DNA of 64,000 nucleotides. It comes from Mobula hypostoma. Taxonomy: Eukaryota. Location of the stretch: contig NC_086097.1 in NCBI RefSeq assembly GCF_963921235.1, forward strand, positions 143,406,001-143,470,000, written 5' to 3'. Both the position numbers and the translations under genes were made by a program. Below, one piece after another: positions 2 to 64,000 of the stretch. How positions within the stretch are numbered: position 1 is the first letter of the stretch; every line of letters starts with the position of its first letter. Under the pieces are notes generated by a model. It saw nothing but the letters and a program-made list of their open reading frames with translations, was not told where the DNA came from and did not search any database.

Positions 2-358
<357 letters not shown>

Positions 359-1463: not shown

Positions 1464-1688
<225 letters not shown>

Positions 1689-6701: not shown

Positions 6702-6792
6702 TAGCTGTCTTTGTATTTACTCTTTTCTTTTAAACTATCTTCTTACTTCCTTTGAAAAAGGTGGCTTGCTTTAAGTGGGTTCAGACACTCTT

Positions 6793-25246: not shown

Positions 25247-26353
<1,107 letters not shown>

Positions 26354-27464
26354 TTACTTTGTCATTTCAGAAATCAGCCAATCAAAGTCAAGGAAATAGA
26401 ACTGCATTTACAATTAAGCAGGGTTTCTTTTGTTTAGGGGTGTTCCCAGCATGGAGTAGACAATTTAAAAGTAAATACATTTTTATAAGTTAGATTTAAA
26501 ATCCTGTATCCTCTAGTTTATAGCCTAGGTGTTTAGACACCATCCCAAAATTTAATAAACTGCAAACTTCAGTTTGAACCTTGGAGGACAGTAAACACAA
26601 ACAGGTTTGTGTACGTCAACTCTTGATGCAAACACAATGTGAAAAAAAAAGGAAATAAAGAACCATATTGATGCACAGGAGTCACTTGCGGGAAGCAAAA
26701 TCTATTGATTTGCAGGTAATGAGAGAGATTCATAATGCAAGCACCTCGGGCAGCCTTGTGCCATCAATAAAAAAAGTTAAAAAAATTATAATCAAGAAAT
26801 ATGAAGATCCAATTGAAAACAGGACAAGAAAATTCTTTCCATCTGATGTAATATGGCATGAAGAAAAATGTATTTCATCAACATTTATTTAATTTCAACT
26901 AGCACCATAAAAGCAACACAATTTTAAATTAATTCTCAGATCCTCCATTTTCAAGAGTTGGCCTTTAAGGAACACTGGACCCAGAAATGTGGTACTAATT
27001 GTAGACAGCAAGCACCATTCAGGTCTCCTAGCAACCCAGAATTTCACATCTTCTGATGAATAAGATTTTGGGCAAGGTGGGAGGGAGTGGAGAAGCAATT
27101 TATTACCCAATCCTATAATAGCTCAATTGACAATAGAATTTTTTTGTTAAATTCTGGACATTTTCAAAAGTAGGGAAGAACCATGCATGTTGGTCTCGGT
27201 ACAAGTCTCCTCTCTCATTAAATAAGCATGCTATTCTCGATCCATTTTTCAAAGACCAGCATTTTGAAAGAAGGGCTTCTAGGCTTTAAAATTTTATTAG
27301 CATTTAATACCAAAGTTATAAAACCATAATAGTGAAATGTAGATTCTAGAATGTTAATCTACACATCTGAAGTGTTAAATCAATAACAGAAATAAGAAAG
27401 AAAATTCAAAAATCTATTAGCCACATATTCAGGTCCAGAGCACAAATGAATTAATTTGTACTCA

Positions 27465-27686
<222 letters not shown>

Positions 27687-37289: not shown

Positions 37290-38932
37290 TCAATGAATAC
37301 TTCTCTTCGGTATTCACCAATGAGAGGGAACTTGATGACAGTGAGGACAATATGAGTGAGGTTGATGTTCTGGAGCATGTCGATATTAAGGGAAAGGAGG
37401 TGTTGGAGTTGTTAAAATACATTAGGACAGATAAGTCCCCGGGACCTGACGGAATATTCCCCAGGCTGCTCCACGAGGTGAGGGAAGAGATTGCTGAGCC
37501 TCTGGCTAGGATCTTCATGTCCTTGTTGTCTACGGGAATGGTACCGGAGGATTGGAGGGAGTCGAATGTTGTTCCCTTGTTCAGAAAAGATAGTAGGGAT
37601 AGTCTGGGTAATTATAGACCAGTGAGCCTTGCATCTGTGGTGGGAAAGCTTTTGGAAAAGATTCTTAGAGATAGGATCTATAGGCATTTAGAGAATCATG
37701 GTCTGATCAGGGACAGTCAGCATGGCTTTGTGAAGGGCAGATCGTGTCTAACAAGCCTGATAGAGTTCTTTGAGGAGGTGACCAGGCATATAGATGAGGG
37801 TAGTGCAGTGGATGTGATCTACATGGATTTTAGTAAGACATTTGACAAGGTTCCACACAGTAGGCTTATTCAGAAAGTCAGAAGGCATGGGATCCAGGGA
37901 AGTTTGGCCAGGTGGATTCAGAATTGGCTTGCCTGCAGAAAGCAGGGGGTGGTGGTGGAGGGAGTACATTCAGATTGGAGGATTGTGACTAGTGGTGTCC
38001 CACAAGGATCTGTTCTGGGACCTCTACTTTTCATGATTTTTATTAACGGCCTGGATGTGGGGGTAGAAGGGTGGGTTGGCAAGTTTGCAGATGACACAAA
38101 GGTTGGTGATGTTGCAGATAGTGTAGAGGGTAGTCTGAGAAGTGGCAGATTGAGTTCAACCCAGAGAAGTGTGAGGTGGTACACTTTGGAAGGACAAACT
38201 CCAAGGCAGAGTACAAAGTAAATGGTAGTGTGGAGGAGCAGGGGGATCCGGGGGTACATGTCCACAGATCCCTGAAAGTTGCCTCACAGGTGGATAGGGT
38301 AGTTAAGAAAGCTTACGGTGTGTTAGCTTTCATAAGTCGAGGGATAGAGTTTAAGAGTTGCGATGTAATGATGCAGCTCTATCAAACTCTGGTTAGGCCA
38401 CACTTGGAGTATTGTGTCCAGTTCTGGTCACCTCACTATAGGAAGGATGTGGAAGCATTGGAAAGGGTACAGAGGAGATTTACCAGGATGCTGCCTGGTT
38501 TAGAAAGTATGGATTATGATCAGAGATTAAGGGAGCTAGAGCTTTACTCTCTGGAGAGAAGGAGGATGAGAGGAGACATGATAGAGGTATAAAAGAAATT
38601 AAGAGGACTAGATAAAGTGGATAGCCAGCGCCTCTTCCCCAGGGCACCACTGCTCAGTACAAGAGGACATGTCTTTAAGGTAAGGGGTGGGAAGTTCAGG
38701 GGGGATATTAGAGGAAAGTTTTTTACTTAGAGAATGGTTGTTGCATGGAATGCACTGCCTGAGTCAGTGGTGGAGGCAGATACACTCGTGAAATTTGAGC
38801 GACTACTAGACAGGTATATGGAGGAATTTAAGGTGGGGGGGTGGGTTATATGGGAGGCAGGGTTTAAGGGTCGGCACAACGTTGTGGGCCGAAGGGCCTG
38901 TACTGTGCTGTTCTGTTCTATGTTCTATGTTC
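37290..38932 (+). mobile_element. Second CR1 copy head-to-tail with the first
   Basis: Begins at sequence equivalent to 35595 (offset 1695); internal deletions near 38130 and 38225; own 3' tail. Confidence 0.9.
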
Positions 38933-48267: not shown

Positions 48268-49822
48268 AGGGACAACCTTAACCGAGCTTGGCAAAATGGC
48301 TTTACTGAATCTTTTCCTGGGTAAAAGAAGTATCAGGAGGTAAATATCTCAGTCCTCCGATAGAGCTAAATGAAGTTAAAGACACCTAAGAACATGACTA
48401 CTGATTGCTTCAACTAGTAGCAATGGTTAGTGAGGACCTGTTTTGCCTCTCGCTGTGAGGTGTGTTCACTGCTCCCTGTTCATAGGTTCTTCATTCCAAT
48501 CCCCTCGCAGTGTGTGAGCTGCAGTTACTGCACAGTTCTACAGATCTGTGTTGGTTATTGAATGATATTAAAGGATTATAGTTAAGGTTATTATCCAGCA
48601 CTTGCTGGACTTGCCTGCTGTTGATTGATCCATTATTCTGCTTAACATAGTGTCAGTCTACTGGCACTATCTCTAGGCTAGCCCAGGGTTTCACTCATCA
48701 CTGTCTTGGTCTCAATCCATGAACTCCCTCACTGCTGCCTGGACGTTTAAAGCACTGGTTAAAAGAATGTGCCAAATAATGATGTGCTGGATAACCAGGA
48801 CTCTACCATTACTATCCACGGATCACTAAGATGAAAAATTCCAATGTCTTGAAAATGGAAGCCCTCTCAATTTTAATACAAAATGCTCAGCCCACTTTCC
48901 AGTGATCACCCTCCCTGCAGCTTCTGTCAAAGAGACTTTAACCTGAAACACCAACTCTGTTTCACTTCCCACAGATGCTGCCTGACCTGCTGAGCAGTTC
49001 CTGCTTTTTCTGTGTGTATTTCCAGTGCCTGCAGTTCTTTTGACAATCTATACAAGCTTGCTGCAGTTTTGTAGCCATAACATAAAACAACAGACATGAA
49101 GTCTCAAACAGTTCGATTTAATATCGGTGAATGTATACAGTACACAACCTGAAATTCTTACTCTTCACAGACATCCACGAAACAGAAAAAAACCCCAAAA
49201 GAATAAATGACAGAAACATTAGAACCGCAATAGAGAAACAAGTCTACCTTTCCCCAAGGTCTGGATGTCATGGCTGCCATTCAAGTTAGTGGAGGATTTC
49301 CTTGGATCAGGTGCAGTTAAACTGTAGTCTACAGCAAAGTAATTATTGCTCGATCAAAACTGACTTCAGAAAGTCATCAGTTAGAAGAGTGAGGTGATCA
49401 CTGAATGGCTGGAACTGTGAAAGTGGATTCGCAGCAGGTTAAAATTATGCACGCCAGAACTGAAAAACCAAAGCAGTAAAACAGCAACTCCCAATTATTG
49501 ATTGATCATTAATATTCATTGTTGGGTTTTTCTGCTTACCTTTATTCCCTGTTTGTAAATTTCTAAACACAAATAGATTAAGAAAAAGATTGTTAGGGCA
49601 GACACCAACAGGAGTTTGTTTTGGTTGACAACCATCCAGGACTAGAATACAGAATCTATCTGAAAAACAAACAGAGCTGGTCATTCTTGCCATCAAAGAG
49701 ATATTCAAGGTCAGGGATAATAATTAACCTCAGCAACAAATATGTAACTTAGTAGAAGGAAGCCTTTGCTGGTGTGTTGCAGCAGTTTTGACTGGACTGT
49801 TACACAGGAGGCCTCTGACGGG

Positions 49823-50002
49823 ATGAGATCCTGGTTGACTGCCCTTGTGTGTGTCGCTGCGGCTGCAGTGGGGCATGGCGGCCCGATCCTACGGAAACCA
49901 ACATCCAAGGATGCTCTGCAAGCTGCCATCCACAAATACAATGCAGGGTCTGGCCAGGAAAACCTCTATAAGCTCACGGGAGCATACTGCATCGCAATGA
50001 AG
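49823..50002 (+). CDS. Cathelicidin-like precursor exon 1 (signal peptide and N-terminal cathelin)
   Basis: MRSWLTALVCVAAAAVGHGGPILRKPTSKDALQAAIHKYNAGSGQENLYKLTGAYCIAMK|gtatag; 180 nt, phase 0; hydrophobic leader; ALQAAIHKYN...ENLYKL parallels cathelin AVLRAVDxxN...ANLYRL. Confidence 0.82.
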
Positions 50003-51040
50003 GTATAGAAGTACCATTGAACTAATGGGATTGTGAAACTGGATTCACAATGATTTTTAATGCTTCAGGATTGGCAGCTGGTTTAGAGCCAGCAGGCCAT
50101 GCCATTCTCTTGTATCTTGCCAGAGGCAAGGGAAAGCCATGAAGCTAGCTTCCCCTGGCTGCTTATGGTTTTGAGAGGTAGTGAAAGCTTCAAGTTAGAG
50201 TTGGCACCACTCCCACCTAATTATCAGTGAGGATGTGGCCTGCTCCAAGATGAACTGCTCTTTGGCCAGATGTCTAAAGTTCATGCCTGTTTTGTGCCAT
50301 TGGCCTGTTTAAAATGGACGCTGGAGTCATGTGATGTAAATAGGGAACAGATTATTATTTATTTTGTAACCTGCACTGAGCACAATCCAAACAATTCCTG
50401 GTCTTTTTCAGCTCAAGAGGAGATCAAAAGGAAAGTGTTCAGTTATCTCTAAATAAGCTTTTATTAGTCACAAATATAGCCCGAACCTCTAACTCCATTC
50501 AGCGAACATATACCTTGCTGATGGCAGCCCTGACACAATTGAGAAGCTTCTACCCAGTGAGATGTATCAGTTGCTTTTTTCAGAAACTAATCAGCTTTCA
50601 AGGACATCAGAAGCAAGTCTGAACTTGTACTTCCCTGATTTGGTTACAGTCCCTCCCCAGTGTTAATTACAGAGCAATAATCAAGAGTTGTTCACTAAAC
50701 TGGTTTGCATTTCCTTCTGTATTCTGGTGAGAAATTGAGCTTTATAAACTTTCACACATCCAGGGACAAATTTGGTCCAGGCAGATGGTGTGGCTGGGAG
50801 CTGAGGAAATGTCGTTTCTGTTTTATGTAGTGTGACAATGGATGAAGTTCAATTTCAGATGCAAATCTGCTTTCTGCTGTTTTCTATTTTTATTCAGAAT
50901 TGTTACTTTTCTGTTCAGAGGTTTGATTTTTATTTTGAATGTCTTCTGGTGCTTTTAAATTCGTTATTTGTAAATTTGTCAATGTATCAGTCTGAAGCCC
51001 ATGGCACAGGCCTGAAAACTCTTATAGAAACACAGTAAGT

Positions 51041-51350
51041 GTGGGCATGTGGCCAAGTGGTTAAGACACTTGACTAGCGACCTGAAGGTCATGAGTTCGA
51101 GCCTCAGCTGAGGAAGCGTGTTGAGTCCTTGAATAAGGCACTTAACCACACAGTGCTCTGCGACGACACCGGTGCCAAGCTGTATCTGCCCTTTCCCTTC
51201 CCTTGGACAACATTGGTGTCGTGGAGAGGGGAGACTTGCAGCATGGGCAACTGCCGGTCTTCCATACAACCTTGCCCAGGCCTGTGCCCTGGAGAGTGAA
51301 GACTTTCCAGGCGCAGATCCATGGTCTCGCAAGACTAACGAATGCCTTTA
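51041..51350 (+). mobile_element. tRNA-derived SINE
   Basis: A box tggccaagtgg (51050-51060) and B box gagttcgagcc (~51093-51103), followed by ~240 nt of non-tRNA body. Confidence 0.8.
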
Positions 51351-53119
51351 ATAGGATGAAACTCTATTCTCCTAGTGAATGCAAGGAGCAATACTGATTT
51401 ACCCATGGAGCAGAATCTCTGAAGGTTTTCATCATTCTGGACAAGCAGATATCTGAGAATAATGGTGGAGGGCCATAGTCTAATGCAGTGTCCTCCTTCC
51501 TTCCCCTCCCTGTGTCACCCTGCCCTGCCACTTTTCTATTTCTATACCAGGAAACCCAAAACACAGTTCTTGAGTTGGGCTGTATCTTACTGCAGGCTGC
51601 TGTACCTTTAAAGACTCAGAAATGAGTTTGTTTAACACCACAGGTCAGCAGATATGCTAAATCCATACAGAATAGGCACCTGGTCTTTAACCCAGGCCAT
51701 AATGACCTGAGACAGCATCCCCACTACCCCTGTACAAAATGCACAGTGTAGTTTTTGCCAAACAAGTCCCGAGGCTATGGTGTACAAATCTAATGATCTC
51801 CTTAAGGTGGCAGTAAGGGTAGATAGTGTTGTCACGAAAGCATGTTGGATGCCGGTCTTCATTAGCTGGGGAATAGAATATAAGAGAGGGCAATTATGCT
51901 ACAACAGCAAGTTGTCGGCATCTTGGATGAAAGCCTCGCAGTGCTGAGGATAGCATGGGGTGGGTGCGGGGGCAGTGGGAGGAAAGGATAACATCTTCAC
52001 CATTTCTTAAAGTGGAGCGGTACTATGGGATGACTAGACCATACAGATGCCTTGTTCATGATTCAGTCAAAATGAGGCACGTTCAGGCAAGTATCAATGT
52101 TACAGTGGCATTTGTTACAGAGGAAGGGCATGCATACTCTCTTGTACAGGTCACGCGAACTTAGCTGATGAACTCCTATACAGTAATATTATTAAATTCA
52201 CAAGCCCCATGTATGGACCCACTCCTAGTTCCTGCAAATGGCAGTGTGAATTTTCTCTCTCACTCTCCACTTTTAGTAATTGTCACAGTAACAATGGAGG
52301 TATGGTTACCTTATCAAATAATATTTGTGTATTTTCCGACTTATGGACAGAATTGACTTGCGGACATCTGGAGAAACAGGACCTGTCTCTTTACTTTAGA
52401 ACAGCCTGGGCTGAACAACATTCCTCATCGAATAAGACCATTAAAGTGCAGATCAACTGGCCTATTGGTCAGGACATCTTGCAGCTACATAAGTGAAAGC
52501 TCTACCCTGAGGATTCTAGAGACGAGGGATAGTAGAAGCTCGGGGAAAGTGGGAGTGGGGCAGGGTGGGTGACAAACCTACCATGGGCCAGACCCTGGCA
52601 ATGTATGTGGACCACTATAAAGCCAAGAAGGCTCTTAATGGAGATACTGATGGGAAAGTACAGTGATGGAAAAGAGCAAAAGGACCCACGGTCTGCTTTT
52701 AATAGACGGGGAACTGCCGAGGCAGTATTAGTTTGTATCTAACTGCTGCAGTATCTGCCCCAGAACTATTTGATGAGCAACGTACTGTAATTGGAACTTC
52801 ACCCTGTATTTTTCCCTGCTTTATTTGTTGTGTTTGGAAGGGAATCGTGGGGAACTTTACTCCAAATCTGACCTGCCTTGGAAATATCTGATGGGGAAAA
52901 GTGGAGGTAACTTTACCCGGTGTCCATAGTGTGGAAGTTTATGTTGTGGAATAAAGTTATTAGATTTTTAAAAATACTGTTTCTCTGAAAAAAAAAGTCT
53001 CAGCTGGTGAACAGATCAGTCCATTGAAGAAAATAAAGCAAACGTATATTAACAAACTTGATTCACTGGGAGGCACTGCTGAGAGTATGCAATGACTTCA
53101 CAATCTCTTCTTTCTGTAG

Positions 53120-53227
53120 GAACTAACACAAGGCAGGGAATACGAGATTGGATTTTCCCTCATGGAGACTGTATGCACTAAGGGAATGGAGGACAGAATG
53201 CAACAGTGTGCATTTATGGAGAATGGG
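53120..53227 (+). CDS. Cathelicidin-like precursor exon 2
   Basis: tctcttctttctgtag|GAA...GGG|gtacgt; 108 nt, phase 0/0; ELTQGREYEIGFSLMETVCTKGMEDRMQQCAFMENG matches cathelin F-x-x-x-ETVC-x10-C-x-F-x-x-x-G. Confidence 0.88.
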
Positions 53228-53695
53228 GTACGTGTGCTTCTGCTGTCACTGTGTCAGTGTCTCTTTGACAATGGTGACCTGATGGGATTGCCTGTATTTC
53301 ACAGATTTCCCCTTTTGACTTCGGGTGATAGAGGGGGGAGAGATCCTGGTTCTAGGCCAGTGGGTAGTCTATCCACTTTGCTGCAGTGATGAATATTGTT
53401 GATTCTAAACCTCCCACTGGGAACCAAGCAAGTATAGTAAATGCAGGTTCAAGCATCCAAACACCCTTGCTCTAGGGATTGTCTTTTGTCTTTAATATGG
53501 AAAATCTTGCAAATTACAGATGGAGAGAGGGATTGTCTGAACAAGAGATTCCCAGCCAAGGGTCCACTGAGCCCTCAGTTAATGGTAAGGGCCCATGGCA
53601 TAAAAAAGGTTGGGAACCCTGGTGGTTCCTGTGTTGATTTATAAAGATGCATTGAACCCCTTGCTACTGTCTGTATTATGTCTTTCCCATGTAGG

Positions 53696-54351
53696 TTCGA
53701 AGAAGGAGTCTGAGAGGGAGTGCCGAAAAAGAGATTTTTGAAATTTTCGTTATTTTTTTTCTCCAACGGCTTTCTGAGAGGCGGGACTGCGCAGGCGTGT
53801 GACGTCGGGCAGTGCAGCGCGGCAGATTTAAAAGGGCAGACATCCTGCTTCGGATTTGATTCGAAGAAGGAGTCTGAGAGTCTGAGTGGGAGTGCCGAAA
53901 AAGAGATTTTTGAAATTTTCGTTATTTTTTTTCTCCAACGGCTTTCTGAGAGGCGGGACTGCGCAGGCGTGTGACGTCGGGCAGTGCAGCGCGGCAGATT
54001 TAAAAGGGCAGACATCCTGCTTCGGATTTGATTCGAAGAAGGAGTCTGAGAGTCTGAGCGGGAGTGCCGAAAAAGAGATTTTTGAAATTTTCGTTATTTT
54101 TTTTCTCCAACGGCTTTCTGAGAGGCGGGACTGCGCAGGCGTGTGACGTCGGGCAGTGCAGCGCGGCAGATTTAAAAGGGCAGACATCCTGCTTCGGATT
54201 TGATTCGAAGAAGGAGTCTGAGAGTCTGAGTGGGAGTGCCGAAAAAGAGATTTTTGAAATTTTCGTTATTTTTTTTCTCCAACGGCTTTCTGAGAGGCGG
54301 GACTGCGCAGGCGTGTGACGTCGGGCAGTGCAGCGCGGCAGATTTAAAAGG
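53696..54351 (+). repeat. 172-bp tandem array (~3.9 units) at CR1 5' end
   Basis: ttcgaagaagg starts at 53696, 53860, 54032, 54204; units almost identical (first has an 8-nt deletion). Confidence 0.95.
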
Positions 54352-54513
54352 CACAGAACCTCAGAGAGCGGGCAGCGTAGTTTGCGGGCGGCGGAGTGAG
54401 CCGGGAGCAGAGTGAAGACTTAAGGGCTTCGGCTCACCGGGCTTAGGCGGAAGCGGGCGAGGCGAGGAAGGTTTGACATTCATTTTCTGTTGCTATTTGA
54501 GGAGAGGGGCATT

Positions 54514-55449
54514 ATGACTGTGAGGGCAGTTTGCTGTTCTCGGTGTCGGATGTGGGAGGCCCTGGAGTCTCCAAGCCTCCCGGACGTCTACATCTGCGCC
54601 AAGTGCATCGAGTTGCAGCTCCTAAGGGACCGCGTTACGGAACTGGAGCTGCAGCTCGATGACCTTCGTCTGGTTAGGGAGAGCGAGGAGGTGATAGAGA
54701 GGAGTGGAAGGCAGGTGGTCACGCCGGGGCCACGGGAGGCAGACAAGTGGGTCACGGTTAGGAGGGGGAAGGGGAAAAGGAAGGTGATGGGGAGTACCCC
54801 GGCGGCTGTGCCCCTTAACAACAGGTACTCCTGTTTGAGTACTGTTGGGGGGGACAGCTTACCCGGGGGAAGCGACAGTGGCCCTGCCTCCGGCACAGAG
54901 TCTGGCCCTGTAGCTCAGAAGGGTAGGGCAAGGAAGAGGAGGGCAGTTGTGATAGGGGACTCGATAGTAAGGGGGTCAAATAGGCGATTCTGTGGACGCA
55001 GTCCAGAGACTCGGATGGTAGTTTGCCTCCCTGGTGCCAGGGTCTGGGATATTTCTGATCGTGTCCAAGATATCCTGAAGTGGGAGGGTGAAGAGCCAGA
55101 GGTCCTGGTACATATAGGTACCAATGACATAGGCAGGAAAAGGGATGAGGTCCTGAAAGAAGAATATAGGGAGCTAGGAAGGGAGTTGAGAAAAAGGACC
55201 GCAAAGGTAGTAATCTCGGGATTACTGCCTGTGCCACGCGACAGTGAGAGTAGGAATGCGATGAGGTGGAGGATAAATGCGTGGCTGAGGGATTGGAGCA
55301 GGGGGCAGGGATTCAAGTTTTTGGATCATTGGGACCTCTTTTGGCGCAGGTGTGACCTGTACAAAAAGGACGGGTTACACTTAAATCCTAGGGGGACCAA
55401 TATCCTGGCAGGGAGATTAGCGGGGGCTACTGAGGTGACTTTAAACTAG
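54514..55449 (+). CDS. CR1 ORF1p: Cys-rich N-terminus, coiled coil, SGNH esterase
   Basis: CSRC...CAKC, heptad region LLRDRVTELELQLDDL, SGNH blocks GDS, PGA, GTND, DGLH; open from ATG 54514 to TAG. Confidence 0.9.
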   Translation: MTVRAVCCSRCRMWEALESPSLPDVYICAKCIELQLLRDRVTELELQLDDLRLVRESEEVIERSGRQVVTPGPREADKWVTVRRGKGKRKVMGSTPAAVPLNNRYSCLSTVGGDSLPGGSDSGPASGTESGPVAQKGRARKRRAVVIGDSIVRGSNRRFCGRSPETRMVVCLPGARVWDISDRVQDILKWEGEEPEVLVHIGTNDIGRKRDEVLKEEYRELGRELRKRTAKVVISGLLPVPRDSESRNAMRWRINAWLRDWSRGQGFKFLDHWDLFWRRCDLYKKDGLHLNPRGTNILAGRLAGATEVTLN

Positions 55450-55454
55450 AATGG

Positions 55455-56306
55455 TTGGGGGGTGGGAATCAAATTAAAGCGGCTAGGTGTGAGGAGGTTA
55501 GTTCACAACAGAGGGATGGGAACCAGTGCAGAGAGACAGAGATTTGTAAAGTGAGCGTAGAAGCAAAAAGTACAAAGGGGAAAAGTAAAAGTGGCAGGCC
55601 AACAAATCCAGGGCAAGCATTAAAAAGGGCTAAGAGAGTTGTAAAAGAGCGCCTGAAGGCTTTATGTGTCAATGCAAGGAGCATTCGTAATAAGGTGGAT
55701 GAATTGAAAGTGCAGATTGTTATTAATGATTATGATATAGTTGGGATCACAGAGACATGGCTCCAGGGTGACCAGGGATGGGAGCTCAACGTTCAGGGAT
55801 ATTCAATATTCAGGAGGGATAGACACGAAGGAAGGGGAGGTGGGGTGGCGTTGCTGGTTAAAAAAGAGATTAACGCAATAGAAAGGAAGGACATAAGCCG
55901 GGAAGATGTGGAATCGATATGGGTAGAGCTGCGTAACACTAAGAGGCAGAAGACGCTGGTGGGAGTTGTGTACAGGCCACCTAACAGTAGTAGTGAGGTC
56001 GGAGATGGTATTAAACAGGAAATTAGAAATGTGTGCAATAAAGGAACAGCAGTTATAATGGGTGACTTCAATCTACATGTAGACTGGGTGAACCAAATTG
56101 GTAAAGGTGCTGAGGAAGAGGATTTCCTGGAATGTATGCGGGATGGTTTTTTGAACCAACATGTCGAGGAACCGACTAGAGAGCAGGCTATTCTGGACTG
56201 GGTTTTGAGCAATGAGGAAGGGTTAATTAGCGATCTTGTCGTGAGAGGCCCCTTGGGTAAGAGTGACCATAATATGGTGGAATTCTTAACATGGAGAGTG
56301 ACGTAG
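55455..56306 (+). CDS. CR1 ORF2 AP-endonuclease part (before frameshift)
   Basis: NARSI, ITETWL, YRPP, MGDFN, SDHN motifs. Confidence 0.85.
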   Translation: MGGGNQIKAARCEEVSSQQRDGNQCRETEICKVSVEAKSTKGKSKSGRPTNPGQALKRAKRVVKERLKALCVNARSIRNKVDELKVQIVINDYDIVGITETWLQGDQGWELNVQGYSIFRRDRHEGRGGGVALLVKKEINAIERKDISREDVESIWVELRNTKRQKTLVGVVYRPPNSSSEVGDGIKQEIRNVCNKGTAVIMGDFNLHVDWVNQIGKGAEEEDFLECMRDGFLNQHVEEPTREQAILDWVLSNEEGLISDLVVRGPLGKSDHNMVEFLTWRVT

Positions 56307-58450
56307 TTAATTCAGAAACAAAGGTTCTGAACTTAAAGAGGGGTAACTTTGAAGGTATGAGACGTGAATTAGCTAAGATAGACTGGCAAATGACACTTCA
56401 AGGATTGACGGTAGATATGCAATGGCAGGCATTTAAAGGTTGCATGGATGAACTACAACAATTGTTCATCCCAGTTTGGCAAAAGAATAAATCAAGGAAG
56501 GTAGTGCACCCGTGGCTGACAAGAGAAATTAGGGATAGTATCAATTCCAAAGAAGTAGCATACAAATTAGCCAGAGAAAGTGGCTCACCTGAGGACTGGG
56601 AGAAATTCAGAGTTCAGCAGAGGAGGACAAAGGGCTTAATTAGGAAGGGGAAAAAAGATTATGAGAGAAAACTGGCAGAGAACATAAAAACGGACTGTAA
56701 AAGCTTTTATAGATATGTAAAAAGGAAAAGACTGATAAAGACAAATGTAGGTCCCCTGCAAACAGAAACAGGTGAATTGATTATGGGGAGCAAGGACATG
56801 GCAGACCAATTAAATAATTACTTTGGTTCTGTCTTCACTAAGGAGGACATAAATAATCTTCCAGAAATAGTAAGGGACAGAGGGTCCAGTGAGATGGAGG
56901 AACTGAGTGAAATACATGTTAGTACGGAAGTGGTGTTAGGTAAATTGAAGGGATTGAAGGCAGATAAATCCCCAGGGCCAGATGGTCTGCATCCCAGAGT
57001 GCTTAAGGAAGTGGCCCAAGAAATAGTGGATGCATTAGTGATAATTTTTCAAAACTTGTTAGATTCTGGACTAGTTCCTGAGGATTGGAGGGTGGCTAAT
57101 GTAACCCCACTTTTTAAAAAAGGAGGGAGAGAGAAACCAGGGAATTATAGGCCGGTTAGCCTAACGTCGGTGGTGGGGAAACTGCTGGAGTCAGTTATCA
57201 AGGATGTGATAACAGCGCATTTGGAAAGCGGTGAAATGATCGGACAAAGTCAGCATGGATTTGTGAAAGGAAAATCATGTCTGACGAATCTCATAGAATT
57301 TTTTGAGGATGTAACTAGTAGAGTGGATAGGGGAGAACCAGTGGATGTGGTATATTTGGATTTTCAAAAGGCTTTTGACAAGGTCCCACATAGGAGATTA
57401 GTGTGCAAACTTAAAGCACACGGTATTGGGGGTAAGGTATTGGTGTGGGTGGAGAATTGGTTAGCAGACAGGAAGCAAAGAGTGGGAATAAACGGGACCT
57501 TTTCAGAATGGCAGGCGGTGACTAGTGGGGTACCGCAAGGCTCAGTGCTGGGACCCCAGTTGTTTACAATATATATTAATGACTTGGATGAGGGAATTAA
57601 ATGCAGCATCTCCAAGTTTGCGGATGACACGAAGCTGGGTGGCAGTGTTAGCAGTGAGGAGGATGCTAAGAGGATGCAGGGTGACTTGGATAGGTTGGGT
57701 GAGTGGGCAAACTCATGGCAGATGCAATTTAATGTGGATAAATGTGAAGTTATCCACTTTGGTGGCAAAAATAGGAAAACAGATTATTATCTGAATGGTG
57801 GCCGATTAGGAAAAGGGGAGGTGCAACGAGACCTGGGTGTCATTATACACCAGTCATTGAAAGTGGGCATGCAGGTACAGCAGGCGGTGAAAAAGGCGAA
57901 CGGTATGCTGGCATTTATAGCGAGAGGATTCGAGTACAGGAGCAGGGAGGTACTACTGCAGTTGTACAAGGCCTTGGTGAGACCACACCTGGAGTATTGT
58001 GTGCAGTTTTGGTCCCCTAATCTGAGGAAAGACATCTTTGCCATAGAGGGAGTACAAAGAAGGTTCACCAGATTGATTCCTGGGATGGCAGGTCTTTCAT
58101 ATGAAGAAAGACTGGATGAACTGGGCTTGTACTCGTTGGAATTTAGAAGATTGAGGGGGGATCTGATTGAAACGTATAAGATCCTAAAGGGATTGGACAG
58201 GCTAGATGCGGGAAGATTGTTCCCGATGTTGGGGAGGTCTAGAACGAGGGGTCACAGTTTGAGGATAGAGGGGAAGCCTTTTAGGACCGAGGTTAGGAAA
58301 AACTTCTTCACACAGAGAGTGGTGAATCTGTGGAATTCTCTGCCACAGCAAACTGTTGAGGCCAGTTCATTAGCTATGTTTAAAAGGAAGTTAGATATGG
58401 CCCTTGTGGCTACAGGGGTCAGGGGGTATGGAGGGAAGGCTGGGTTCTGA
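56291..58450 (+). CDS. CR1 ORF2 reverse-transcriptase part (after frameshift)
   Basis: 719-aa open frame with [21 protein letters not shown]. Confidence 0.9.
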   Translation: MESDVVNSETKVLNLKRGNFEGMRRELAKIDWQMTLQGLTVDMQWQAFKGCMDELQQLFIPVWQKNKSRKVVHPWLTREIRDSINSKEVAYKLARESGSPEDWEKFRVQQRRTKGLIRKGKKDYERKLAENIKTDCKSFYRYVKRKRLIKTNVGPLQTETGELIMGSKDMADQLNNYFGSVFTKEDINNLPEIVRDRGSSEMEELSEIHVSTEVVLGKLKGLKADKSPGPDGLHPRVLKEVAQEIVDALVIIFQNLLDSGLVPEDWRVANVTPLFKKGGREKPGNYRPVSLTSVVGKLLESVIKDVITAHLESGEMIGQSQHGFVKGKSCLTNLIEFFEDVTSRVDRGEPVDVVYLDFQKAFDKVPHRRLVCKLKAHGIGGKVLVWVENWLADRKQRVGINGTFSEWQAVTSGVPQGSVLGPQLFTIYINDLDEGIKCSISKFADDTKLGGSVSSEEDAKRMQGDLDRLGEWANSWQMQFNVDKCEVIHFGGKNRKTDYYLNGGRLGKGEVQRDLGVIIHQSLKVGMQVQQAVKKANGMLAFIARGFEYRSREVLLQLYKALVRPHLEYCVQFWSPNLRKDIFAIEGVQRRFTRLIPGMAGLSYEERLDELGLYSLEFRRLRGDLIETYKILKGLDRLDAGRLFPMLGRSRTRGHSLRIEGKPFRTEVRKNFFTQRVVNLWNSLPQQTVEASSLAMFKRKLDMALVATGVRGYGGKAGF

Positions 58451-59845
58451 GTTGGATGATCAGCCATGATCATAATAAATGGCGGTGCAGGCTCGAAGGG
58501 CCGAATGGCCTACTCCTGCACCTATTTTCTATGTTTCTATGTTTCTATGTTATCCTACACTTTGCCTCAGGCCCAATTCTGACACAGAGTTTCAACTCAA
58601 AATGTTGACGATTCTTATACCACTCACTGATTTTGCTTGAACTTTTGCGTTTGTCTGCAGATTGTTTGTTGCTCTGGATTCCAACATTTGCAGTCACTTG
58701 TGTCTCTAACTTATCTAGACCATATTTAACACATGTTAGTGAAACAGGAGGCCTGTCAACCCATTAGTTCTGTTCGATCTTTTCTAGGGAATTCTCCATT
58801 TATTGCTCTAATGTCTTCCCATTGCATTAACTTTAAATATTTAATTTTCTCTTAAGTAATGGTATCTATTTCAGCAATTCTCTGGTGAAAATATTTCCAG
58901 GCTCTGTGCATTGAACGTTAAAATAAAGTTTTCCTCGTTGTTTAAATGTCAGTATTACAATGGTGTCCATGGCTGTGCAATCAGAGGTAAAAGTATTCCG
59001 TCAGGCTGTATCAAAACACTTGCATTAAATCTCCCCTAATCTATCATGCTCCAGGGGAAATAATATCTCATCTCAACTGCAGTTAGGTTTTCTGACCTCT
59101 GGCATCGTCCTGAAGAACCTTGTTTTCTCTTTTCTATAACAGTGCAGACAAAAATGTATTTGTTATTAACTGTCAAGGAACCAACATATGCAACACTTAG
59201 TATGACTCCTTCACTTCTGTTTTTGAAGAGATTTCAGATAACTGGTTTTCATTGCCGGTATCAGAACGGGCTGCCTCTTCAGTAAGTATTCCATCTGTAA
59301 TACTGCCTCAGTCGTTTACTCTGCCTTAGCACTAACTGACCTGCTGGGAACGTCCAAGTACTGAAATTTGCAATTTTCCACATTCCTCTGTTTATATTCT
59401 CAGTTCCCGCCCCCCCCCACCTCCACCACCATTTACCCATTGACCGATGACCTCTAGCACCTATACCCATGGCAACTTTGGCCTTACTATATTACCAATA
59501 TTTCCTTTAGTTTTTCCATCCATCCTTTAATTTCTCTCATACCAAATTCTTATGAAAGGCCCTCAGCTTGAAAGATTTACCCTGTTTTTTTTCCCTACAG
59601 ATTCTGCCTGACCTGCTATGTGTTTCTAACATTTTCTGTTGTATTCATTTCCCTTTTACCAACCCCTAAATACCCTTGGCAATTTTGTAGCCTGATTAGA
59701 CTTTTAGGGAATTATACATTGGGATGCCTAGTTTGCTGTCTTTAATCAGGCCACTCACTTCAAGGCACAAGTATGGTCTTTGGTTAAGTGAAGAAACTAA
59801 CTTAAGTTAAAGACATCACACCTGTCACAGAACACTGTTCTACCT

Positions 59846-60811
59846 TCAACAAGAGAAAAATTGCAGATACTGGATATCCGAGCAACACACACAAAATGGT
59901 GGAGGAACTCAGCAGGCCAGACAGCAGTCCTGCCGAAGGTTTCAGCTCGAAACTTGGACTGTACTTTTTTCCATAGATTGAATTGAATTAACTTTATTTC
60001 TTACATCCTTCACATACATGAGGAGTGAAAATATTTATGTTACGTCTCCATCTAAATGTGCCATCTGCAATCATAGTAATTTGTAATAAATAGAACAGTC
60101 AATGTAATACACCCAAATCAGTGTGAGTTCAGCAGTCTGATGGCCTGGTGGAAGAAGCTGTCCCAGAGCCTGTTGGTCCTGGCTTTCATGCTGCAGTACC
60201 GCTTCCCGGATGGTAGCAGCTGGAATAGATTGTGGTTGGAATGGTTTGGGTCCCCAACGATCGTACAGACCCTTTTTACACACCTGTCCTTGTAAATGTC
60301 CTGAATCATGGGAAGTTCACAACTACAGATGCGCTGGGCTGTCCGCACCACTCTCTGCAGAGTCCTGCGATTAAGGGAGGTACAGTTCCCATATCAGGCA
60401 GTGATACAGCCAATTAGGGTGCTCTCAAAATTGTGCCCCTGTAGAAAGTTCTTAGGATTTGGGCACCCATACCAAACTTCCTCAACTGTCTGAGGTGAAA
60501 GAGGCACTGTTGTGCCTTTTTCACCACACAGCTGCTGTGCATGGAGCATGTGAGGTCCTCGGTGATGTGGATGCCAAGGAGCTTGAAGCTGTTTACCCTC
60601 TCAACCCCAGATCCATTGATGTCAATAGGGGTTAGCCTGTCTCCATTCCTCCTCTAATCCACAGCCAGCTCCTTTGTTTTTGCGACATTGAGGGAGAGGT
60701 TGTTTTCTTGACACCACTGTGTCAGAGAGATGACTTCTTCCCTGTAGGCCACCTCATTATGCTCAGATGCTGCCTGGCCTGCTGAGTTCCTCCAGCATTT
60801 TGTGTGTGTTG
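59846..60811. mobile_element. Miniature Penelope-derived inverted element (13-bp TSD) interrupted by a Rex1/Babar fragment (~59978-60760, -)
   Basis: cactgttctacct at 59833-59845 and 60812-60824; inner minus-strand HNLFQLLPSGKRY...DSFFHQAIRLLN. Confidence 0.8.
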
Positions 60812-61540
60812 CACTGTTCTACCTCTCATCAGTGATCTTTGCTCTTCTTTGAGCTTCTACAAATTGGATTACCTACAGCAAGAATCTCAAGAGACCGGAA
60901 AAACAATACCAACCCAGTCACTGCAGGATTCCTCAAAATCATTGGAGTGATGTAAACTAAAGTCTGCATCCTGTCCCAGGTCAACATCCCCAGCACTGAG
61001 GCACTGATACACCCAGTCACCTCTGTCGGGCAAGCCACATCATTGAGATACCCAACAGCAAACTCCTGAAACAGGAATACTTGTCAGTTTCTTTACATTG
61101 ATTACAAAATCACAGTTGCTGTAGTTCTTATGAGCAAGGCATTTAAGGGTTCATATACAGAAATAACTGAAACCTGTTGATCATTTGCAAAAGATCATTT
61201 AAGTAGACCTAAAATATTTCAGTCTTTAACTAAAATGGACTGGAACACAAAGGTTGTTAAAAGCTCTATATAGATTGCATTTGAAATTCTTTGTTGGCTT
61301 GGAGGAAAGGCAGCTTAAATTGTTCAGGAAGAGGAAAGTTCTAACAACAATGCCAAGGCTGGGACACCGTTAAGATGAGACAGGATGACTTAGTGTAGGG
61401 TTGGTTTTCTGGAAAGAAGTCTAAAGGCCTTTTCATTCCAAACCTTTTGTAATGAATATAACATGCCTCTAGGTATGAATGGATTCTGAAAATTGAAAAT
61501 GTAACTAATTATTCCATTTATTGTGCCAATTTCCCAATAG

Positions 61541-61621
61541 ACGGCACTGACCTGTAATGGAGAGATTACAATTCAATACGATGTCCCAAGACCAGTAAGA
61601 ACTTCGGTCACCTGCGTACAG
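61541..61621 (+). CDS. Cathelicidin-like precursor exon 3
   Basis: atttcccaatag|ACG...CAG|gtaaga; 81 nt, phase 0/0; TALTCNGEITIQYDVPRPVRTSVTCVQ supplies cathelin Cys3 (C-x-G-x-I/V) and Cys4. Confidence 0.82.
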
Positions 61622-62200
61622 GTAAGAATTTTTTTCCATGATGACTTCACTAGAGATGGCTACAAATCGATGGTGTATGTAAAGGAATGCTGATTGGACA
61701 AACCAGATGTAACTTCTCAGATTGGAGATAGTAATCATTAGTTGTTAGTGCTTCAAAGAGAGGGCAATTAATTGAAAGTTAATATCAGGCAAAGACTATA
61801 TCTGGTGATACAGGGCCTAATGGAAACTGTTGGTATCACTGCCACTAAGTCCCCACAGATCCAAGGTCTTGCCAGTGACTGAACGGACAGATTTATCCAC
61901 CACATAAATACATGACTACTACAGCAAGCTAGTGTTGCGCTTTGCAATTCCAAATCATTAAACTAATTAAAAGAAAGACACAGGACTGGGAATGCAAGGC
62001 TAACTTCATTTTTTACTTTAAGCAAAAAATGAAGTTAGACTTGCATTCCCAGTCCTTGCATTTCCAGTATCGCATGGTAGCGTCCTGACATATGCAGTTC
62101 ACTTATTTTCACATGAAAAGCCTGAAATGAATTATATAAACAAACAAAAATGCTTAATCAAACAATATATTTACAGTATTACCCAAATACTACTGAAATA

Positions 62201-62890
62201 GGAGGAGAACATGGCGGTGCGACGGAGCGCGCGCGGCCTCTCCGGTGATGAATATCTGTTATCTGTCAAGTAGGGGACCGTGCACAATTCTGATTTGATG
62301 GAGATTGATGTGAGAGTACGAAGGAACATCTGGAAAACTTCTGAAATGCCCGCTTTGCTGCCGCTGCTACTGTGTGGTAACCGGAATCTCCGGAGCAGAA
62401 GACCCCGAAATCCTCGGCTTTGCTTGTTTCAGTGGCCGGGGCTAGGTCGAAAGCGCTCGGCAGAGGATAGCGCTCGGGAGGCTGTATTGGAGGGGCTGGT
62501 TGGAGGCTCGGAGTTTTCGGACAGATGGACTCAGTGTCGGCTGTGGTCGGCTGCTTCCAAGGCATCGGCAAGTTGACGGTGCCTGGAGGTTTATGGCAGG
62601 GAGTTTCTCCCTTTTGCCACCTGCTGTCGGGTACTCGGGAGTTGATCGACTCGGGGATTTTTGAGACTTTTTTTACCGTACCCATGGTTTGTTCTTCATC
62701 GAATTATGGTATTGCTTTGCACTGCTGTAACTATATGTTATAATTATGTGGTTCTGTCAGTGTTAGTCTTTGGTTTGTCCTGTTTTCTGTGATATCACTC
62801 CGGAGAAACATTATATCATTTCTTAATGCACGTATGCATTTCTAAATGACAATAAAAGAGGACTGAGTGTTCTCATAATCTAAATGTAAA
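62201..62890 (+). mobile_element. Young CpG-rich unclassified retroelement inserted in the LTR
   Basis: Starts aacatggcgg, retains CpGs, ends gacaataaaa...aatctaaat; flanked by aaata on both sides. Confidence 0.55.
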
Positions 62891-63224
62891 TATTAAATAC
62901 ACAATTTAATATTCCCTGTTCAGCTATAAACTCCAACTCAATACAGAATGCATCTCAACTATATAATTCAACTACTATACAGATGTCCATAGCATAGTAA
63001 CTTTTAAATGGTCCTATTCAGTTCTAAAGGTTCAATTGCTGTGGAGGATTTCTTACTCTTGTGGGATAACTTGTTCCCTGACTAGGGGGATCACTCTGCT
63101 TGGCAGGTGAGACTTATGGCTGTGAAACAATCCCAGGTTCTGAGGCCTTTTCTGTGGTGGTTGTAGGAGTTGACTCTGGGACTGCAGGAAGTGGTTCTGA
63201 CAGCTCTGACCACCTTTCTACTCT

Positions 63225-63891
63225 ATAGCAATAATAACAGGGTTGTTGTGATGGGAGATTTTAACTTTCCTAATATTGATTGGCATCTCCTTAGTGCAAG
63301 GGATTTAGATGGGGTGGAGTTTGTTTTGTATGTTCAGGAAGGTTTCTTGAAGCAATATACAGATAAACCTCACTACAGGAAGAATGTGGAAACCATAGAA
63401 AGGGTCCAGAGGAGACTTACAAGGATGTTGCCTGGATTGGGGAACATGCCTTACGAGAATAGGTTGAGTGAACTTGGCCTTTTCTCCTTGGAGTGATGGA
63501 GGATGAGAGGTGACCTGATAGAGGTGTATAAGGTAATGAGAGGCATTGATCATGTGGATAGTCAGAGGCTTTTTCCCAGGACTGAAATGGCTAACACGAG
63601 GGGGCATAGTTTTAAGGTGCTTGGAAATAGGTTCTGAGGGGATATCAGGGACAACTTTTTCCTACACAGAGAGTGGTGGGTGCGTGGAATGCACTGCCAA
63701 TGGTGGTGGTGGAAGTGGATACGATAGGGTCTTTTAAGAGACTCTTAGAAAGGTACATGGAGCTTATAAAGAGGAAGGCTATACAGTAGGGAAATTCGAG
63801 GCAGCTTCTAGAGTAGGTTACACGGTCAGCACAATGTTGTGGGTTGAAGGGCCTGTAATGCGCTGTAGATTTCTATGTTCTATGTTCTATG
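63225..63891 (+). mobile_element. Internally deleted CR1 fragment
   Basis: Endonuclease motif VVMGDFNFPNIDW fused directly to 3' RT motif PHYRKNVETIERVQRR; (ttctatg)n tail. Confidence 0.8.
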
Positions 63892-64000
63892 ACATCAGAC
63901 ACAATCTCCACTGTTCTGTCCTTAAACTTTCTGAGATTGTTCTTTTGATCACCTCTGTAGTCCCTCAACAGGACTGTTTGTCTAGGACTGAAATATTGAA

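What the first reader, a model, noticed from the sequence alone, without database searches (positions are those of the whole stretch)
49823..61621. Hidden cathelicidin-like gene with a complete cathelin domain in a probable cartilaginous fish
Seen: three exons (180, 108, 81 nt) with canonical GT-AG sites, all phase 0, splice into an open 123-aa chain: MRSWLTALVCVAAAAVGHGGPILRKPTSKDALQAAIHKYNAGSGQENLYKLTGAYCIAMK-ELTQGREYEIGFSLMETVCTKGMEDRMQQCAFMENG-TALTCNGEITIQYDVPRPVRTSVTCVQ. Established: cathelicidin genes have four exons; exons 1-3 encode the signal peptide and four-Cys cathelin domain (exon 2 typically 108 nt ending CxFxxxG) and exon 4 the antimicrobial peptide. Inference: this is a divergent cathelicidin precursor spread over >11.8 kb by TE insertions. 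To my knowledge chondrichthyan cathelicidins are poorly characterised, so the exon-4 peptide may be new.
Basis: partly seen in the sequence, partly recalled or inferred. Interest (0 to 1): 0.9.

Follow-up and report, generated by a model that had tools for sequence, protein, structure and literature searches.

The report
Cathelin-domain gene without antimicrobial peptide
The three exons are real and belong to an already annotated devil-ray gene for a small secreted cathelicidin-like protein, but its last exon adds only one amino acid before the stop, so there is no hidden antimicrobial peptide to find.

Summary

The window is Mobula hypostoma DNA, 100% identical to GCA_963921235.1. The spliced chain equals residues 1-123 of the 124-aa NCBI model "cathelicidin-related peptide Oh-Cath-like", so the gene is not hidden.

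Exon 4 lies 9.9 kb past exon 3, about 7.5 kb beyond the window end. It carries only AAC TGA (Asn, stop). The same 180/108/81/6-9 nt structure was mapped exon by exon in six species. Ten of eleven elasmobranchs have TGA at this position. Proteins are 124-128 aa and end 3-5 residues after the fourth Cys.

A skate RNA contig joins all four exons. Pairwise dN/dS is 0.14-0.40. The frame after TGA is not conserved as coding.

By sequence the domain is nearest cathelin domains (Pfam Cathelicidins 46.9 bits; PDB protegrin and LL-37 pro-domains E about 1e-6). Cystatins come second and SPP2 is below threshold.

Verdict: a conserved, expressed, cathelin-domain-only secreted protein. It is cathelicidin-related by domain and gene structure, but it is not an antimicrobial-peptide precursor. 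Its function is inferred, not shown. Interest is modest.

The parts
49704..49822 (+). Conserved 5' flank / 5'UTR of the gene, including the block TTCAAGGTCAGGGATAATAATTAAC at 49704-49728
   Evidence: aligned across 11 elasmobranch loci; ATAATAATTAAC is invariant and further invariant blocks run up to the ATG. In skate this stretch lies inside the transcript.
49823..50002 (+). Exon 1 (coding part, 180 nt): signal peptide plus the N-terminal helix and strand of the cathelin-like domain, including the extra invariant Cys56
   Evidence: exhaustive search with this exon found P0001 and P0002.
50003..53119 (+). Intron 1 (3117 nt), with a 310-nt segment at 51039-51348 that is absent in Hemitrygon
53120..53227 (+). 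Exon 2 (108 nt): ...ETVC...C.F..NG, holding Cys79 and Cys90. The N of the NGT sequon (95-97) sits here and the T in exon 3
   Evidence: This exon alone hits Pfam Cathelicidins at E 4.5e-4. Sequon.
53228..61540 (+). Intron 2 (8313 nt)
53698..58545 (+). Mobula-specific CR1-type LINE insertion inside intron 2, with 172-nt tandem monomers at its 5' end and ORFs for GDSL esterase, AP endonuclease and reverse transcriptase
   Evidence: Pfam on ORFs 54490-58450; repeat spacing; boundaries from collinearity with Hemitrygon.
61541..61621 (+). Exon 3 (81 nt): Cys101 to Cys121, then Val-Gln; donor GTAAGA
61622..64000 (+). First 2379 nt of intron 3 (9877 nt in all), including a LINE 3' fragment near 63170-63790. 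Exon 4 (AAC TGA plus 3'UTR) is outside the window, at window-equivalent 71499-71504 = L002 31677-31682

Best explanation
These are exons 1-3 of a four-exon, single-copy Mobula hypostoma gene that NCBI already annotates as 'cathelicidin-related peptide Oh-Cath-like'. It encodes a 124-aa precursor made of a signal peptide of about 19 aa and a 105-aa cathelin-like (cystatin-superfamily) domain, and nothing else. The fourth exon, 9.9 kb downstream and outside the window, contributes a single Asn codon and the stop. The protein therefore ends three residues after the fourth cysteine, and no antimicrobial peptide is encoded or released. Shown here: gene structure, identity to the annotated model, orthologues with the same truncated end across sharks, rays and skates, splicing in a skate transcript, and purifying selection. 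Inferred: the protein is secreted as an intact folded domain with two disulfides (79-90, 101-121 by homology), probably N-glycosylated at Asn95, and has a fifth invariant Cys56 that is free or makes a dimer. Because it carries no cargo peptide, it must act as the folded domain itself. My preferred mechanism, about 40% likely, is cystatin-like binding or inhibition of papain-type cysteine proteases. This rests on the conserved N-terminal G-x-P-V/I segment, the first hairpin (QMPQG/QIPQG in sharks, aligned to cystatin QxVxG) and the V-P-x-P second hairpin. The alternative is another extracellular binding or host-defence role, like the uncleaved mammalian cathelin-type proteins NGP/p15.
For: Exons and translation. 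Window identical to GCA_963921235.1 over 24178 nt, and exon 4 = AAC TGA at L002 31677-31682. 100% identity to P0011 over 123 aa, and NCBI names. Eleven full-length orthologues of 124-128 aa, all ending 3-5 residues after Cys4. The same 180/108/81/6-9 nt structure mapped exon by exon in six species. TGA at the same position in 10 of 11 species. Skate RNA contig L005 joins all four exons, with a 124-aa ORF followed by at least 134 nt of 3'UTR. dN/dS 0.14-0.40 in all 21 pairs, with third-position excess. Pfam on P0011: Cathelicidins 46.9 bits (GA 21), Cystatin 28.2 (GA 22.2); all 11 members hit both. PDB: protegrin and human cathelin-like domains E 2e-6 to 4e-4, best cystatin E 0.02; family profile 4e-6 versus 2e-4. 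HMMER aligns shark QMPQG to chicken cystatin QLVSG and VP to IP(W). Five Cys, NGT sequon in 10 of 11, near-neutral pI. No second copy within 10 kb in any locus or in the window.
Against: Function is untested. No expression data exist for Mobula itself. Both AlphaFold runs failed (pLDDT 44 and 41), so the fold rests on sequence homology only. The putative inhibitory motifs are only partly conserved: Q of the first hairpin is E, A or L in batoids, and the Trp of the cystatin PW loop is absent. The human cathelin-like domain is reported (my recollection) to lack clear inhibitor activity. Pfam's Cathelicidins model also matches kininogen and some cystatin clusters, so that hit alone does not fix the family. 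Orthology to tetrapod CAMP was not tested. No homologue outside elasmobranchs was recovered.
Confidence: 0.82

Rival explanations
1. One reading: a classical cathelicidin precursor whose exon 4 encodes a new cationic antimicrobial peptide released by proteolysis.
For: Four-exon, phase-0 structure with a 108-nt exon 2, and best hits to cathelin pro-domains. NCBI product names say cathelicidin-related.
Against: Exon 4 is one codon plus TGA in Mobula, and 1-2 codons plus TGA in 10 of 11 species. The skate mRNA has the same stop. The frame after TGA is interrupted after 3-11 codons in Narcine, S. torazame, Leucoraja and Cetorhinus and is frameshifted in Mustelus. Its substitutions show no third-position bias, and Mobula-Hemitrygon divergence (14%) is close to intron level, about 10%. 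The only long tail, in Hemitrygon isoform X1, arises from a TGA-to-CGA change plus exon-3 skipping, in a species where exon 3 itself ends in TAG.
Confidence: 0.03
2. It is better classed as a divergent type-2 cystatin. It may be the elasmobranch counterpart of small fish cystatin-like genes such as the clusters named 'zgc:194981' and 'probable cystatin-16'. On this view the cathelicidin resemblance only reflects shared superfamily ancestry, and it works as a cysteine-protease inhibitor.
For: Size and ending are typical of type-2 cystatins: about 105 aa mature, ending a few residues after the last Cys. Pfam Cystatin is above threshold in all 11 members, up to E 1.4e-9. The alignment to chicken cystatin and cystatin F is gapless, with QMPQG on QLVSG/QIVKG. 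The nearest language-model clusters are 123-130-aa proteins that are mostly Cystatin-annotated, with scores 0.90-0.92.
Against: Cathelin domains outscore every cystatin by 5-13 bits in three PDB searches, and Pfam Cathelicidins beats Cystatin by 3-19 bits in the three proteins scanned individually. The gene has a third intron two codons after Cys4, as in cathelicidin genes (four exons, PMC3978490). Type-2 cystatin genes have three exons by my recollection. The inhibitory motifs are incomplete. Atlas hits are leads without alignment.
Confidence: 0.13
3. It is a member of the expanded chondrichthyan Spp2 (secreted phosphoprotein 24) family.
For: Spp2 proteins share the four-Cys cystatin-like domain, and cartilaginous fishes have many copies (PMC13188829). 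Exon 2 gives a weak Spp-24 hit, E 0.032.
Against: Pfam Spp-24 stays below its threshold: only 2 of 11 members reach E<1, best 0.024. There is no serine-rich or SxE-rich tail, which that paper gives as the family hallmark. Three diagnostic motifs of this protein are absent from that paper's 230-sequence Spp2 alignment, which was built partly from BLAST of the same M. hypostoma assembly. No tandem copies are present.
Confidence: 0.01
4. It is a decaying former cathelicidin, i.e. a pseudogene truncated by a nonsense mutation and no longer functional.
For: A terminal exon with a single codon looks vestigial. The 3'UTR just after TGA is alignable between sharks and rays.
Against: The ORF is intact and splice sites are canonical in all six species mapped exon by exon. 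dN/dS is 0.14-0.40. 49 invariant columns include all five mature Cys. The promoter block is conserved and the gene is transcribed and spliced in skate.
Confidence: 0.01

Closest known systems
Cathelicidins (CAMP/LL-37, protegrins, snake Oh-Cath; Pfam PF00666)
   Same: Signal peptide plus a cathelin-like domain of about 100 aa with four Cys at the same spacing. Gapless HMMER alignment to the solved protegrin-3 and human pro-domains, sharing NLY.L, F.v.ETVC and C.F..NG...C.G..T. Four exons, phase-0 introns, a 108-nt exon 2, and a third intron two codons after Cys4 (PMC3978490 for the family rule).
   Different: No exon-4 peptide at all: one or two codons, then the stop. No processing site. An extra invariant Cys56, a conserved NGT sequon, and a first hairpin that looks like cystatin QxVxG in sharks. 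The domain is near neutral (pI 5.3-9.0), whereas I recall cathelin pro-domains as typically acidic.
Type-2 cystatins (chicken cystatin, cystatin C, cystatin F; Pfam PF00031)
   Same: A secreted single domain of about 105-120 aa with two C-terminal disulfides, ending a few residues after the last Cys. N-terminal G-x-P-V/I segment. Q...G hairpin of identical length, and V/I-P in the second hairpin. Glycosylation sequon, as in cystatins F and E/M (my recollection).
   Different: Lower scores than to cathelin domains. Val of QxVxG is replaced by Pro or Thr, Q is lost in batoids, and the PW loop has no Trp. The gene has an extra 3' intron.
Mammalian neutrophilic granule protein (NGP) and rabbit p15
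   Same: Cathelicidin-related proteins that are conserved along their whole length and are active without release of a peptide (PMC3978490). They are the known precedent for a cathelin-type protein that works as an intact domain.
   Different: NGP/p15 keep a C-terminal extension and arose within mammals.
Spp2 / secreted phosphoprotein 24, including the chondrichthyan spp2.1-2.3 and spp2.Like clades
   Same: Signal peptide plus a four-Cys cystatin-like domain with an ETVC-type motif.
   Different: No Ser-rich, SxE or Arg-rich tail. Pfam Spp-24 is below threshold. The protein is absent from the published Spp2 data set for the same genome.

Membership tests
Cathelicidin (antimicrobial-peptide precursor) | N-terminal signal peptide | tested here: inconclusive
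   The sequence shows M-R, then a 14-residue hydrophobic core, then G-H-G; this is conserved in all orthologues. No signal-peptide predictor was available.
Cathelicidin (antimicrobial-peptide precursor) | Cathelin-like domain recognised by PF00666 above the gathering score | tested here: met
   P0011 scores 46.9 bits against a cut-off of 21; 11 of 11 orthologues hit. Caveat: the model also matches kininogens and some cystatin clusters.
Cathelicidin (antimicrobial-peptide precursor) | Four conserved cysteines (two disulfides) at cathelin spacing | tested here: met
   Cys79, 90, 101 and 121 are invariant. Cys79, 90 and 101 align to the cysteines of protegrin and human pro-domains; those alignments stop at residue 108-114, so Cys121 is placed by spacing only. 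Disulfide bonding itself is not testable here.
Cathelicidin (antimicrobial-peptide precursor) | Four-exon gene, with exons 1-3 encoding the signal peptide and cathelin domain | tested here: met
   180/108/81/6-9 nt, all phase 0, in six species. Family rule from PMC3978490.
Cathelicidin (antimicrobial-peptide precursor) | Exon 4 encodes a C-terminal mature (usually cationic) peptide that is released by proteolysis | tested here: not met
   Exon 4 is AAC TGA in Mobula. There are 1-2 codons then TGA in 10 of 11 species. The skate mRNA is the same, and the downstream frame is not conserved as coding.
Type-2 cystatin | Cystatin domain PF00031 above the gathering score | tested here: met
   28.2 bits against 22.2 for P0011; 11 of 11 members hit, best E 1.4e-9. 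Lower than the Cathelicidins score in the three proteins scanned individually (P0001, P0002, P0011).
Type-2 cystatin | Inhibitory wedge: N-terminal Gly, QxVxG first hairpin, PW second hairpin | tested here: inconclusive
   G-x-P-V/I is present in most members. Sharks have QMPQG, QIPQG or QIPPG. One shark (Pristiophorus, EISQG) and all batoids lack the Q (ELTQG, ELSQG, ALPQG, LVPHG, LVTFG). The second hairpin is VPxP without Trp.
Type-2 cystatin | Three-exon gene with the stop in the exon that encodes the last disulfide (rule from my recollection) | tested here: not met
   An extra intron lies two or three codons after Cys4, and the stop is in a fourth exon.
Type-2 cystatin | Inhibition of papain-like cysteine proteases | not testable with these tools
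   Needs recombinant protein and enzyme assays.
Spp2 / Spp24 | PF07448 above the gathering score | tested here: not met
   Best E 0.024 among 11 members; the cut-off is 26 bits.
Spp2 / Spp24 | Serine-rich / SxE phosphorylation region after the cystatin-like domain (PMC13188829) | tested here: not met
   The protein ends 3-5 residues after Cys4.
Spp2 / Spp24 | Location in the sh3bp4/arl4c/nme9/vps8 cluster | not tested
   The window shows a NAC-domain gene and an actin gene upstream instead. Wider synteny could not be examined.

The most novel reading that the evidence does not exclude
The elasmobranch gene may be the true orthologue of vertebrate cathelicidin genes, with its peptide-coding exon cut down to one or two codons by a stop that was fixed before sharks and rays diverged. 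Alternatively it may preserve the pre-peptide state. Either way, a cathelin domain has been kept under purifying selection with no cargo peptide across the whole group. That would be direct evolutionary evidence that the long-debated cathelin pro-domain has a function of its own. It would also mean that elasmobranchs lack classical cathelicidin peptides despite database names that say otherwise.
Probability: 0.3. Interest if true: 0.6.

Novelty: new variant of a known kind. Interest (0 to 1): 0.3.

Why it matters
For antimicrobial-peptide mining it is a caution. Twelve elasmobranch RefSeq/GenBank models are named after snake cathelicidin peptides (Oh-Cath, CRAMP, batroxicidin), yet they encode no peptide at all.

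For evolution of the cystatin superfamily it offers a natural case of a cathelin-type domain maintained without cargo. The domain shows features intermediate between cystatins and cathelicidins. This bears on the old question of whether cathelicidins arose from a protease inhibitor and whether the pro-domain has its own function.

The searched open literature holds no description of elasmobranch cathelicidin-like genes beyond a '+' in a 2009 survey table (PMC2784779). The gene itself, however, is already in public annotation and is an ordinary member of a well-known superfamily.

Tried and rejected
1. I did not type the 123-aa spliced chain into any tool. Instead I searched with exon 1 by reference, which led to stored orthologues and to P0011, which is identical to the window's product.

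2. Structure: two AlphaFold2 runs, on the full precursor and on the mature domain with 11-row alignments, gave pLDDT 44 and 41. They were too poor for fold searches, so none were run.

3. Reaching beyond elasmobranchs failed. The profile search of the 5.8-billion-protein set returned only the family itself, even at E up to 10 (one search was a parameter error).

4. Selenocysteine or read-through at the conserved TGA is rejected. The downstream frame is broken early in four species and frameshifted in one. There is no third-position bias, and divergence is at intron level.

5. SPP2 identity is rejected.

6. I tested whether the catshark 'cstl1' gene with published expression data is the orthologue. 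Its primers find no match within 4 mismatches in five shark loci, so no expression data could be borrowed.

7. Literature look-ups for zgc:194981 and SRR13269313 found nothing.

8. No second cathelin-like copy was found in the window or in any locus flank.


Full report
**Observation**

- Exon 1: 49823-50002, 180 nt, starting at ATG, donor GTATAG.
- Exon 2: 53120-53227, 108 nt, after ...tctgtAG, donor GTACGT.
- Exon 3: 61541-61621, 81 nt, after ...ccaatAG, donor GTAAGA.

All three are phase 0 and give the same 123-aa chain. Exon 2 alone already touches Pfam Cathelicidins (E 4.5e-4), ahead of Spp-24 (E 0.032).

**Whose gene it is**

An exhaustive HMMER search with exon 1 by reference found two stored proteins. 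The sources name them as follows:
- P0001: 'cathelicidin-related antimicrobial peptide Na_CRAMP-like isoform X1', Hemitrygon akajei.
- P0002: 'cathelicidin-related peptide Oh-Cath-like', Mustelus asterias, with an identical-length member in Cetorhinus maximus.

Searching with P0002 returned nine further proteins of 124-128 aa from sharks, rays and skates. One of them, P0011 (Mobula hypostoma, 124 aa), is 100% identical to the window's product over all 123 residues and has one extra C-terminal Asn.

The locus of P0011 (L002, GCA_963921235.1, record OY992592.1) is identical to the window over all 24178 overlapping bases. The window is therefore Mobula hypostoma, and the gene is already annotated. 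It is not hidden.

**The fourth exon**

In L002 the coding sequence ends at 31682. The last exon starts after ...tttcttacAG and reads AAC TGA. That is 9877 nt downstream of exon 3, at window-equivalent 71499-71504, about 7.5 kb beyond the window's end.

I mapped each annotated protein onto its own genomic locus. This gave the same structure in Pristis, Leucoraja, Mustelus, Heterodontus and Chiloscyllium: 180 (192 in the Pristis model) / 108 / 81 nt, then a terminal exon of 6 nt (rays, skates) or 9 nt (sharks, CAG GAY TGA). With four more loci, TGA stands at this position in 10 of 11 species.

A Logan RNA contig from run SRR13269313 matches the Leucoraja erinacea genome at 96-100% in five blocks. 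Its blocks join exon 1 to 2, 2 to 3 and 3 to 4 at exactly these boundaries. It carries the 124-aa ORF, the TGA, and at least 134 nt of 3'UTR contiguous with exon 4. This is direct transcript evidence for the architecture in an orthologue.

**Is anything translated after the TGA?**

In Mobula, Pristis and Hemitrygon the frame stays open for 31 codons after that position, and partly so in some sharks. I tested for read-through or a relic peptide.
- The frame is closed after 3, 4, 8 and 11 codons in Narcine, S. torazame, Leucoraja and Cetorhinus, and is frameshifted in Mustelus.
- Differences are spread evenly over codon positions, for example 6/3/4 for Mobula versus Hemitrygon.
- Divergence there is 14%, no lower than in the introns of the same pair at about 10%. 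The UTR further downstream is more conserved, at about 7%.

It is therefore untranslated sequence.

Hemitrygon is the informative exception. The last codon of its exon 3 is TAG instead of CAG, and its exon-4 TGA has become CGA. The NCBI 'isoform X1' skips exon 3 and reads 33 codons into what is 3'UTR elsewhere. With exon 3 included, the Hemitrygon protein would end one residue after Cys4. The short end is thus the conserved state.

**Is the gene functional?**
- All 21 pairwise comparisons of the 121 shared codons give dN/dS of 0.14-0.40, with an excess of third-position changes.
- 49 columns are invariant, including five cysteines of the mature chain.
- The 150 nt upstream of the ATG contain invariant blocks across all 11 loci.
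- The gene is single-copy within the window and within 10 kb in every locus.

**Family**

| Test | Cathelin / Cathelicidins | Cystatin | Spp-24 |
|---|---|---|---|
| Pfam on P0011 | 46.9 bits (cut-off 21) | 28.2 bits (cut-off 22.2) | below threshold; best E 0.024 in 2 of 11 members |
| PDB, P0011 | protegrin-3 31 bits, E 2e-6; human LL-37 pro-domain E 4e-4 | best is cystatin F, 18 bits, E 0.02 | none |
| PDB, family profile | E 4e-6 | E 2e-4 | none |
| PDB, shark P0002 | E 1.5e-5 | E 5e-3 | none |

All 11 orthologues hit both the Cathelicidins and Cystatin models.

The gene structure also follows the cathelicidin rule of four exons, with the first three encoding the signal peptide and cathelin domain (PMC3978490).

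Two caveats apply. The Pfam Cathelicidins model also matches kininogens and some cystatin clusters. And the nearest language-model clusters are small proteins, mostly annotated as cystatins ('probable cystatin-16', 'zgc:194981'; scores 0.90-0.92), which are leads only.

HMMER aligns the shark hairpin QMPQG on chicken cystatin QLVSG and cystatin F QIVKG, and VP on the IP of the PW loop. The mature N-terminus, G/A/S-P-V/I, recalls the cystatin N-terminal segment. The family therefore looks like a cathelin domain that keeps cystatin-like loops. These loops are degenerate in batoids (ELTQG in Mobula).

**SPP2**

A 2026 paper describes an expanded Spp2 family in cartilaginous fishes. Its members have Ser-rich or SxE-rich tails and sit in a cluster next to nme9/vps8, on chromosome 6 in M. 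hypostoma per its table (PMC13188829).
- The present protein has no tail.
- Three of its diagnostic motifs are absent from that paper's 230-sequence alignment, which was built partly by BLAST of the same assembly.
- Pfam Spp-24 is below threshold.

SPP2 is rejected.

**What the protein is likely to do**

Shown: a 124-aa precursor with a hydrophobic leader ending G-H-G. The mature chain is 105 aa, has five Cys, carries an NGT sequon at 95-97 in 10 of 11 species, and has a pI of 5.3-9.0.

Inferred: it is secreted, takes a cystatin fold with two disulfides, is glycosylated, and has Cys56 free or forming a dimer. With no cargo peptide it must act as the folded domain.
- About 40%: cystatin-like binding or inhibition of papain-type proteases.
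- About 35%: another extracellular binding or host-defence role as an intact protein, for which mammalian NGP/p15 are the precedent.
- Remainder: unknown.

Both structure predictions were too poor to use.

**Context**
- Intron 2 holds a 4848-nt CR1-type LINE (53698-58545) that is absent in Hemitrygon.
- Upstream lie an actin gene on the minus strand, with its first exon at about 27611 and its main exon at 25247-26341.
- At the window start lie the last exons of a NAC-domain gene (170-352, Pfam NAC E 6e-20).
- An actin gene also ends 10 kb upstream of the Chiloscyllium orthologue. That adjacency is therefore shared by this shark and ray, although the orientation differs.

**Literature**

A 2009 survey scores cathelicidin as present in Chondrichthyes (PMC2784779). 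A 2019 review says shark antimicrobial peptides are little studied and names no cathelicidin (PMC6795676). Other searches found no description of these genes.

**Verdict**

The gene is already annotated, however, and the exciting part, a new exon-4 peptide, is refuted. What remains of interest is that elasmobranchs conserve a cathelin-domain-only protein under selection.

Noticed in passing
window 49704-49822 (and -260..-1 of L001-L012): The proximal 5' flank is conserved across 11 sharks, rays and skates. It has an invariant ATAATAATTAAC inside GATAATAATTAAC, which is one mismatch from the HNF1 consensus as I recall it. A CCAAT-like block and an invariant run before the ATG follow. This may point to a liver-type promoter. 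In skate the block lies inside a 5'UTR that is spliced from an upstream non-coding exon.
   Followed up: partly
L003 16539-16619 and 22249-22350 (Hemitrygon akajei): The stop codon has shifted. Exon 3 ends in TAG (CAG elsewhere), and the exon-4 TGA is CGA. The NCBI isoform X1 therefore skips exon 3 and reads 33 codons of sequence that is 3'UTR in other species.
   Followed up: yes
window 25247-27611 (-): An actin gene with a single coding intron at the codon 41/42 position. Exon 1 starts [16 protein letters not shown] near 27611, and the main exon is 25247-26341. An actin gene also lies about 10 kb upstream of the Chiloscyllium orthologue (L008 1-118), but on the same strand as the cathelin-like gene.
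   Followed up: partly
window 170-352 and about 1524-1655 (+): The last exons of a NACA/NACAD-type gene: a NAC domain (Pfam E 5.9e-20) followed by an IEDLSQQ...EKFKVP exon. From memory the residues look more like NACAD than NACA.
   Followed up: partly
window 53698-58545 (+): A full-length CR1-type LINE inserted in intron 2 and absent from Hemitrygon. It has 172-nt tandem monomers at its 5' end (about 53750-54300) and ORFs with GDSL-esterase, AP-endonuclease and reverse-transcriptase domains. Several other RT-bearing LINE copies lie elsewhere in the window (6752-8470, 15446-16705, 35456-38221).
   Followed up: partly
window 51039-51348: A 310-nt segment of intron 1 with no counterpart in the otherwise collinear Hemitrygon intron. 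It is probably a short interspersed element insertion.
   Followed up: no
P0011 residue 56 (window exon 1, codon at 49988-49990): There is a fifth cysteine, invariant in all 11 orthologues, on the strand just before the first hairpin. It has no partner in the mature chain, so it is either a free thiol or makes an intermolecular disulfide.
   Followed up: no
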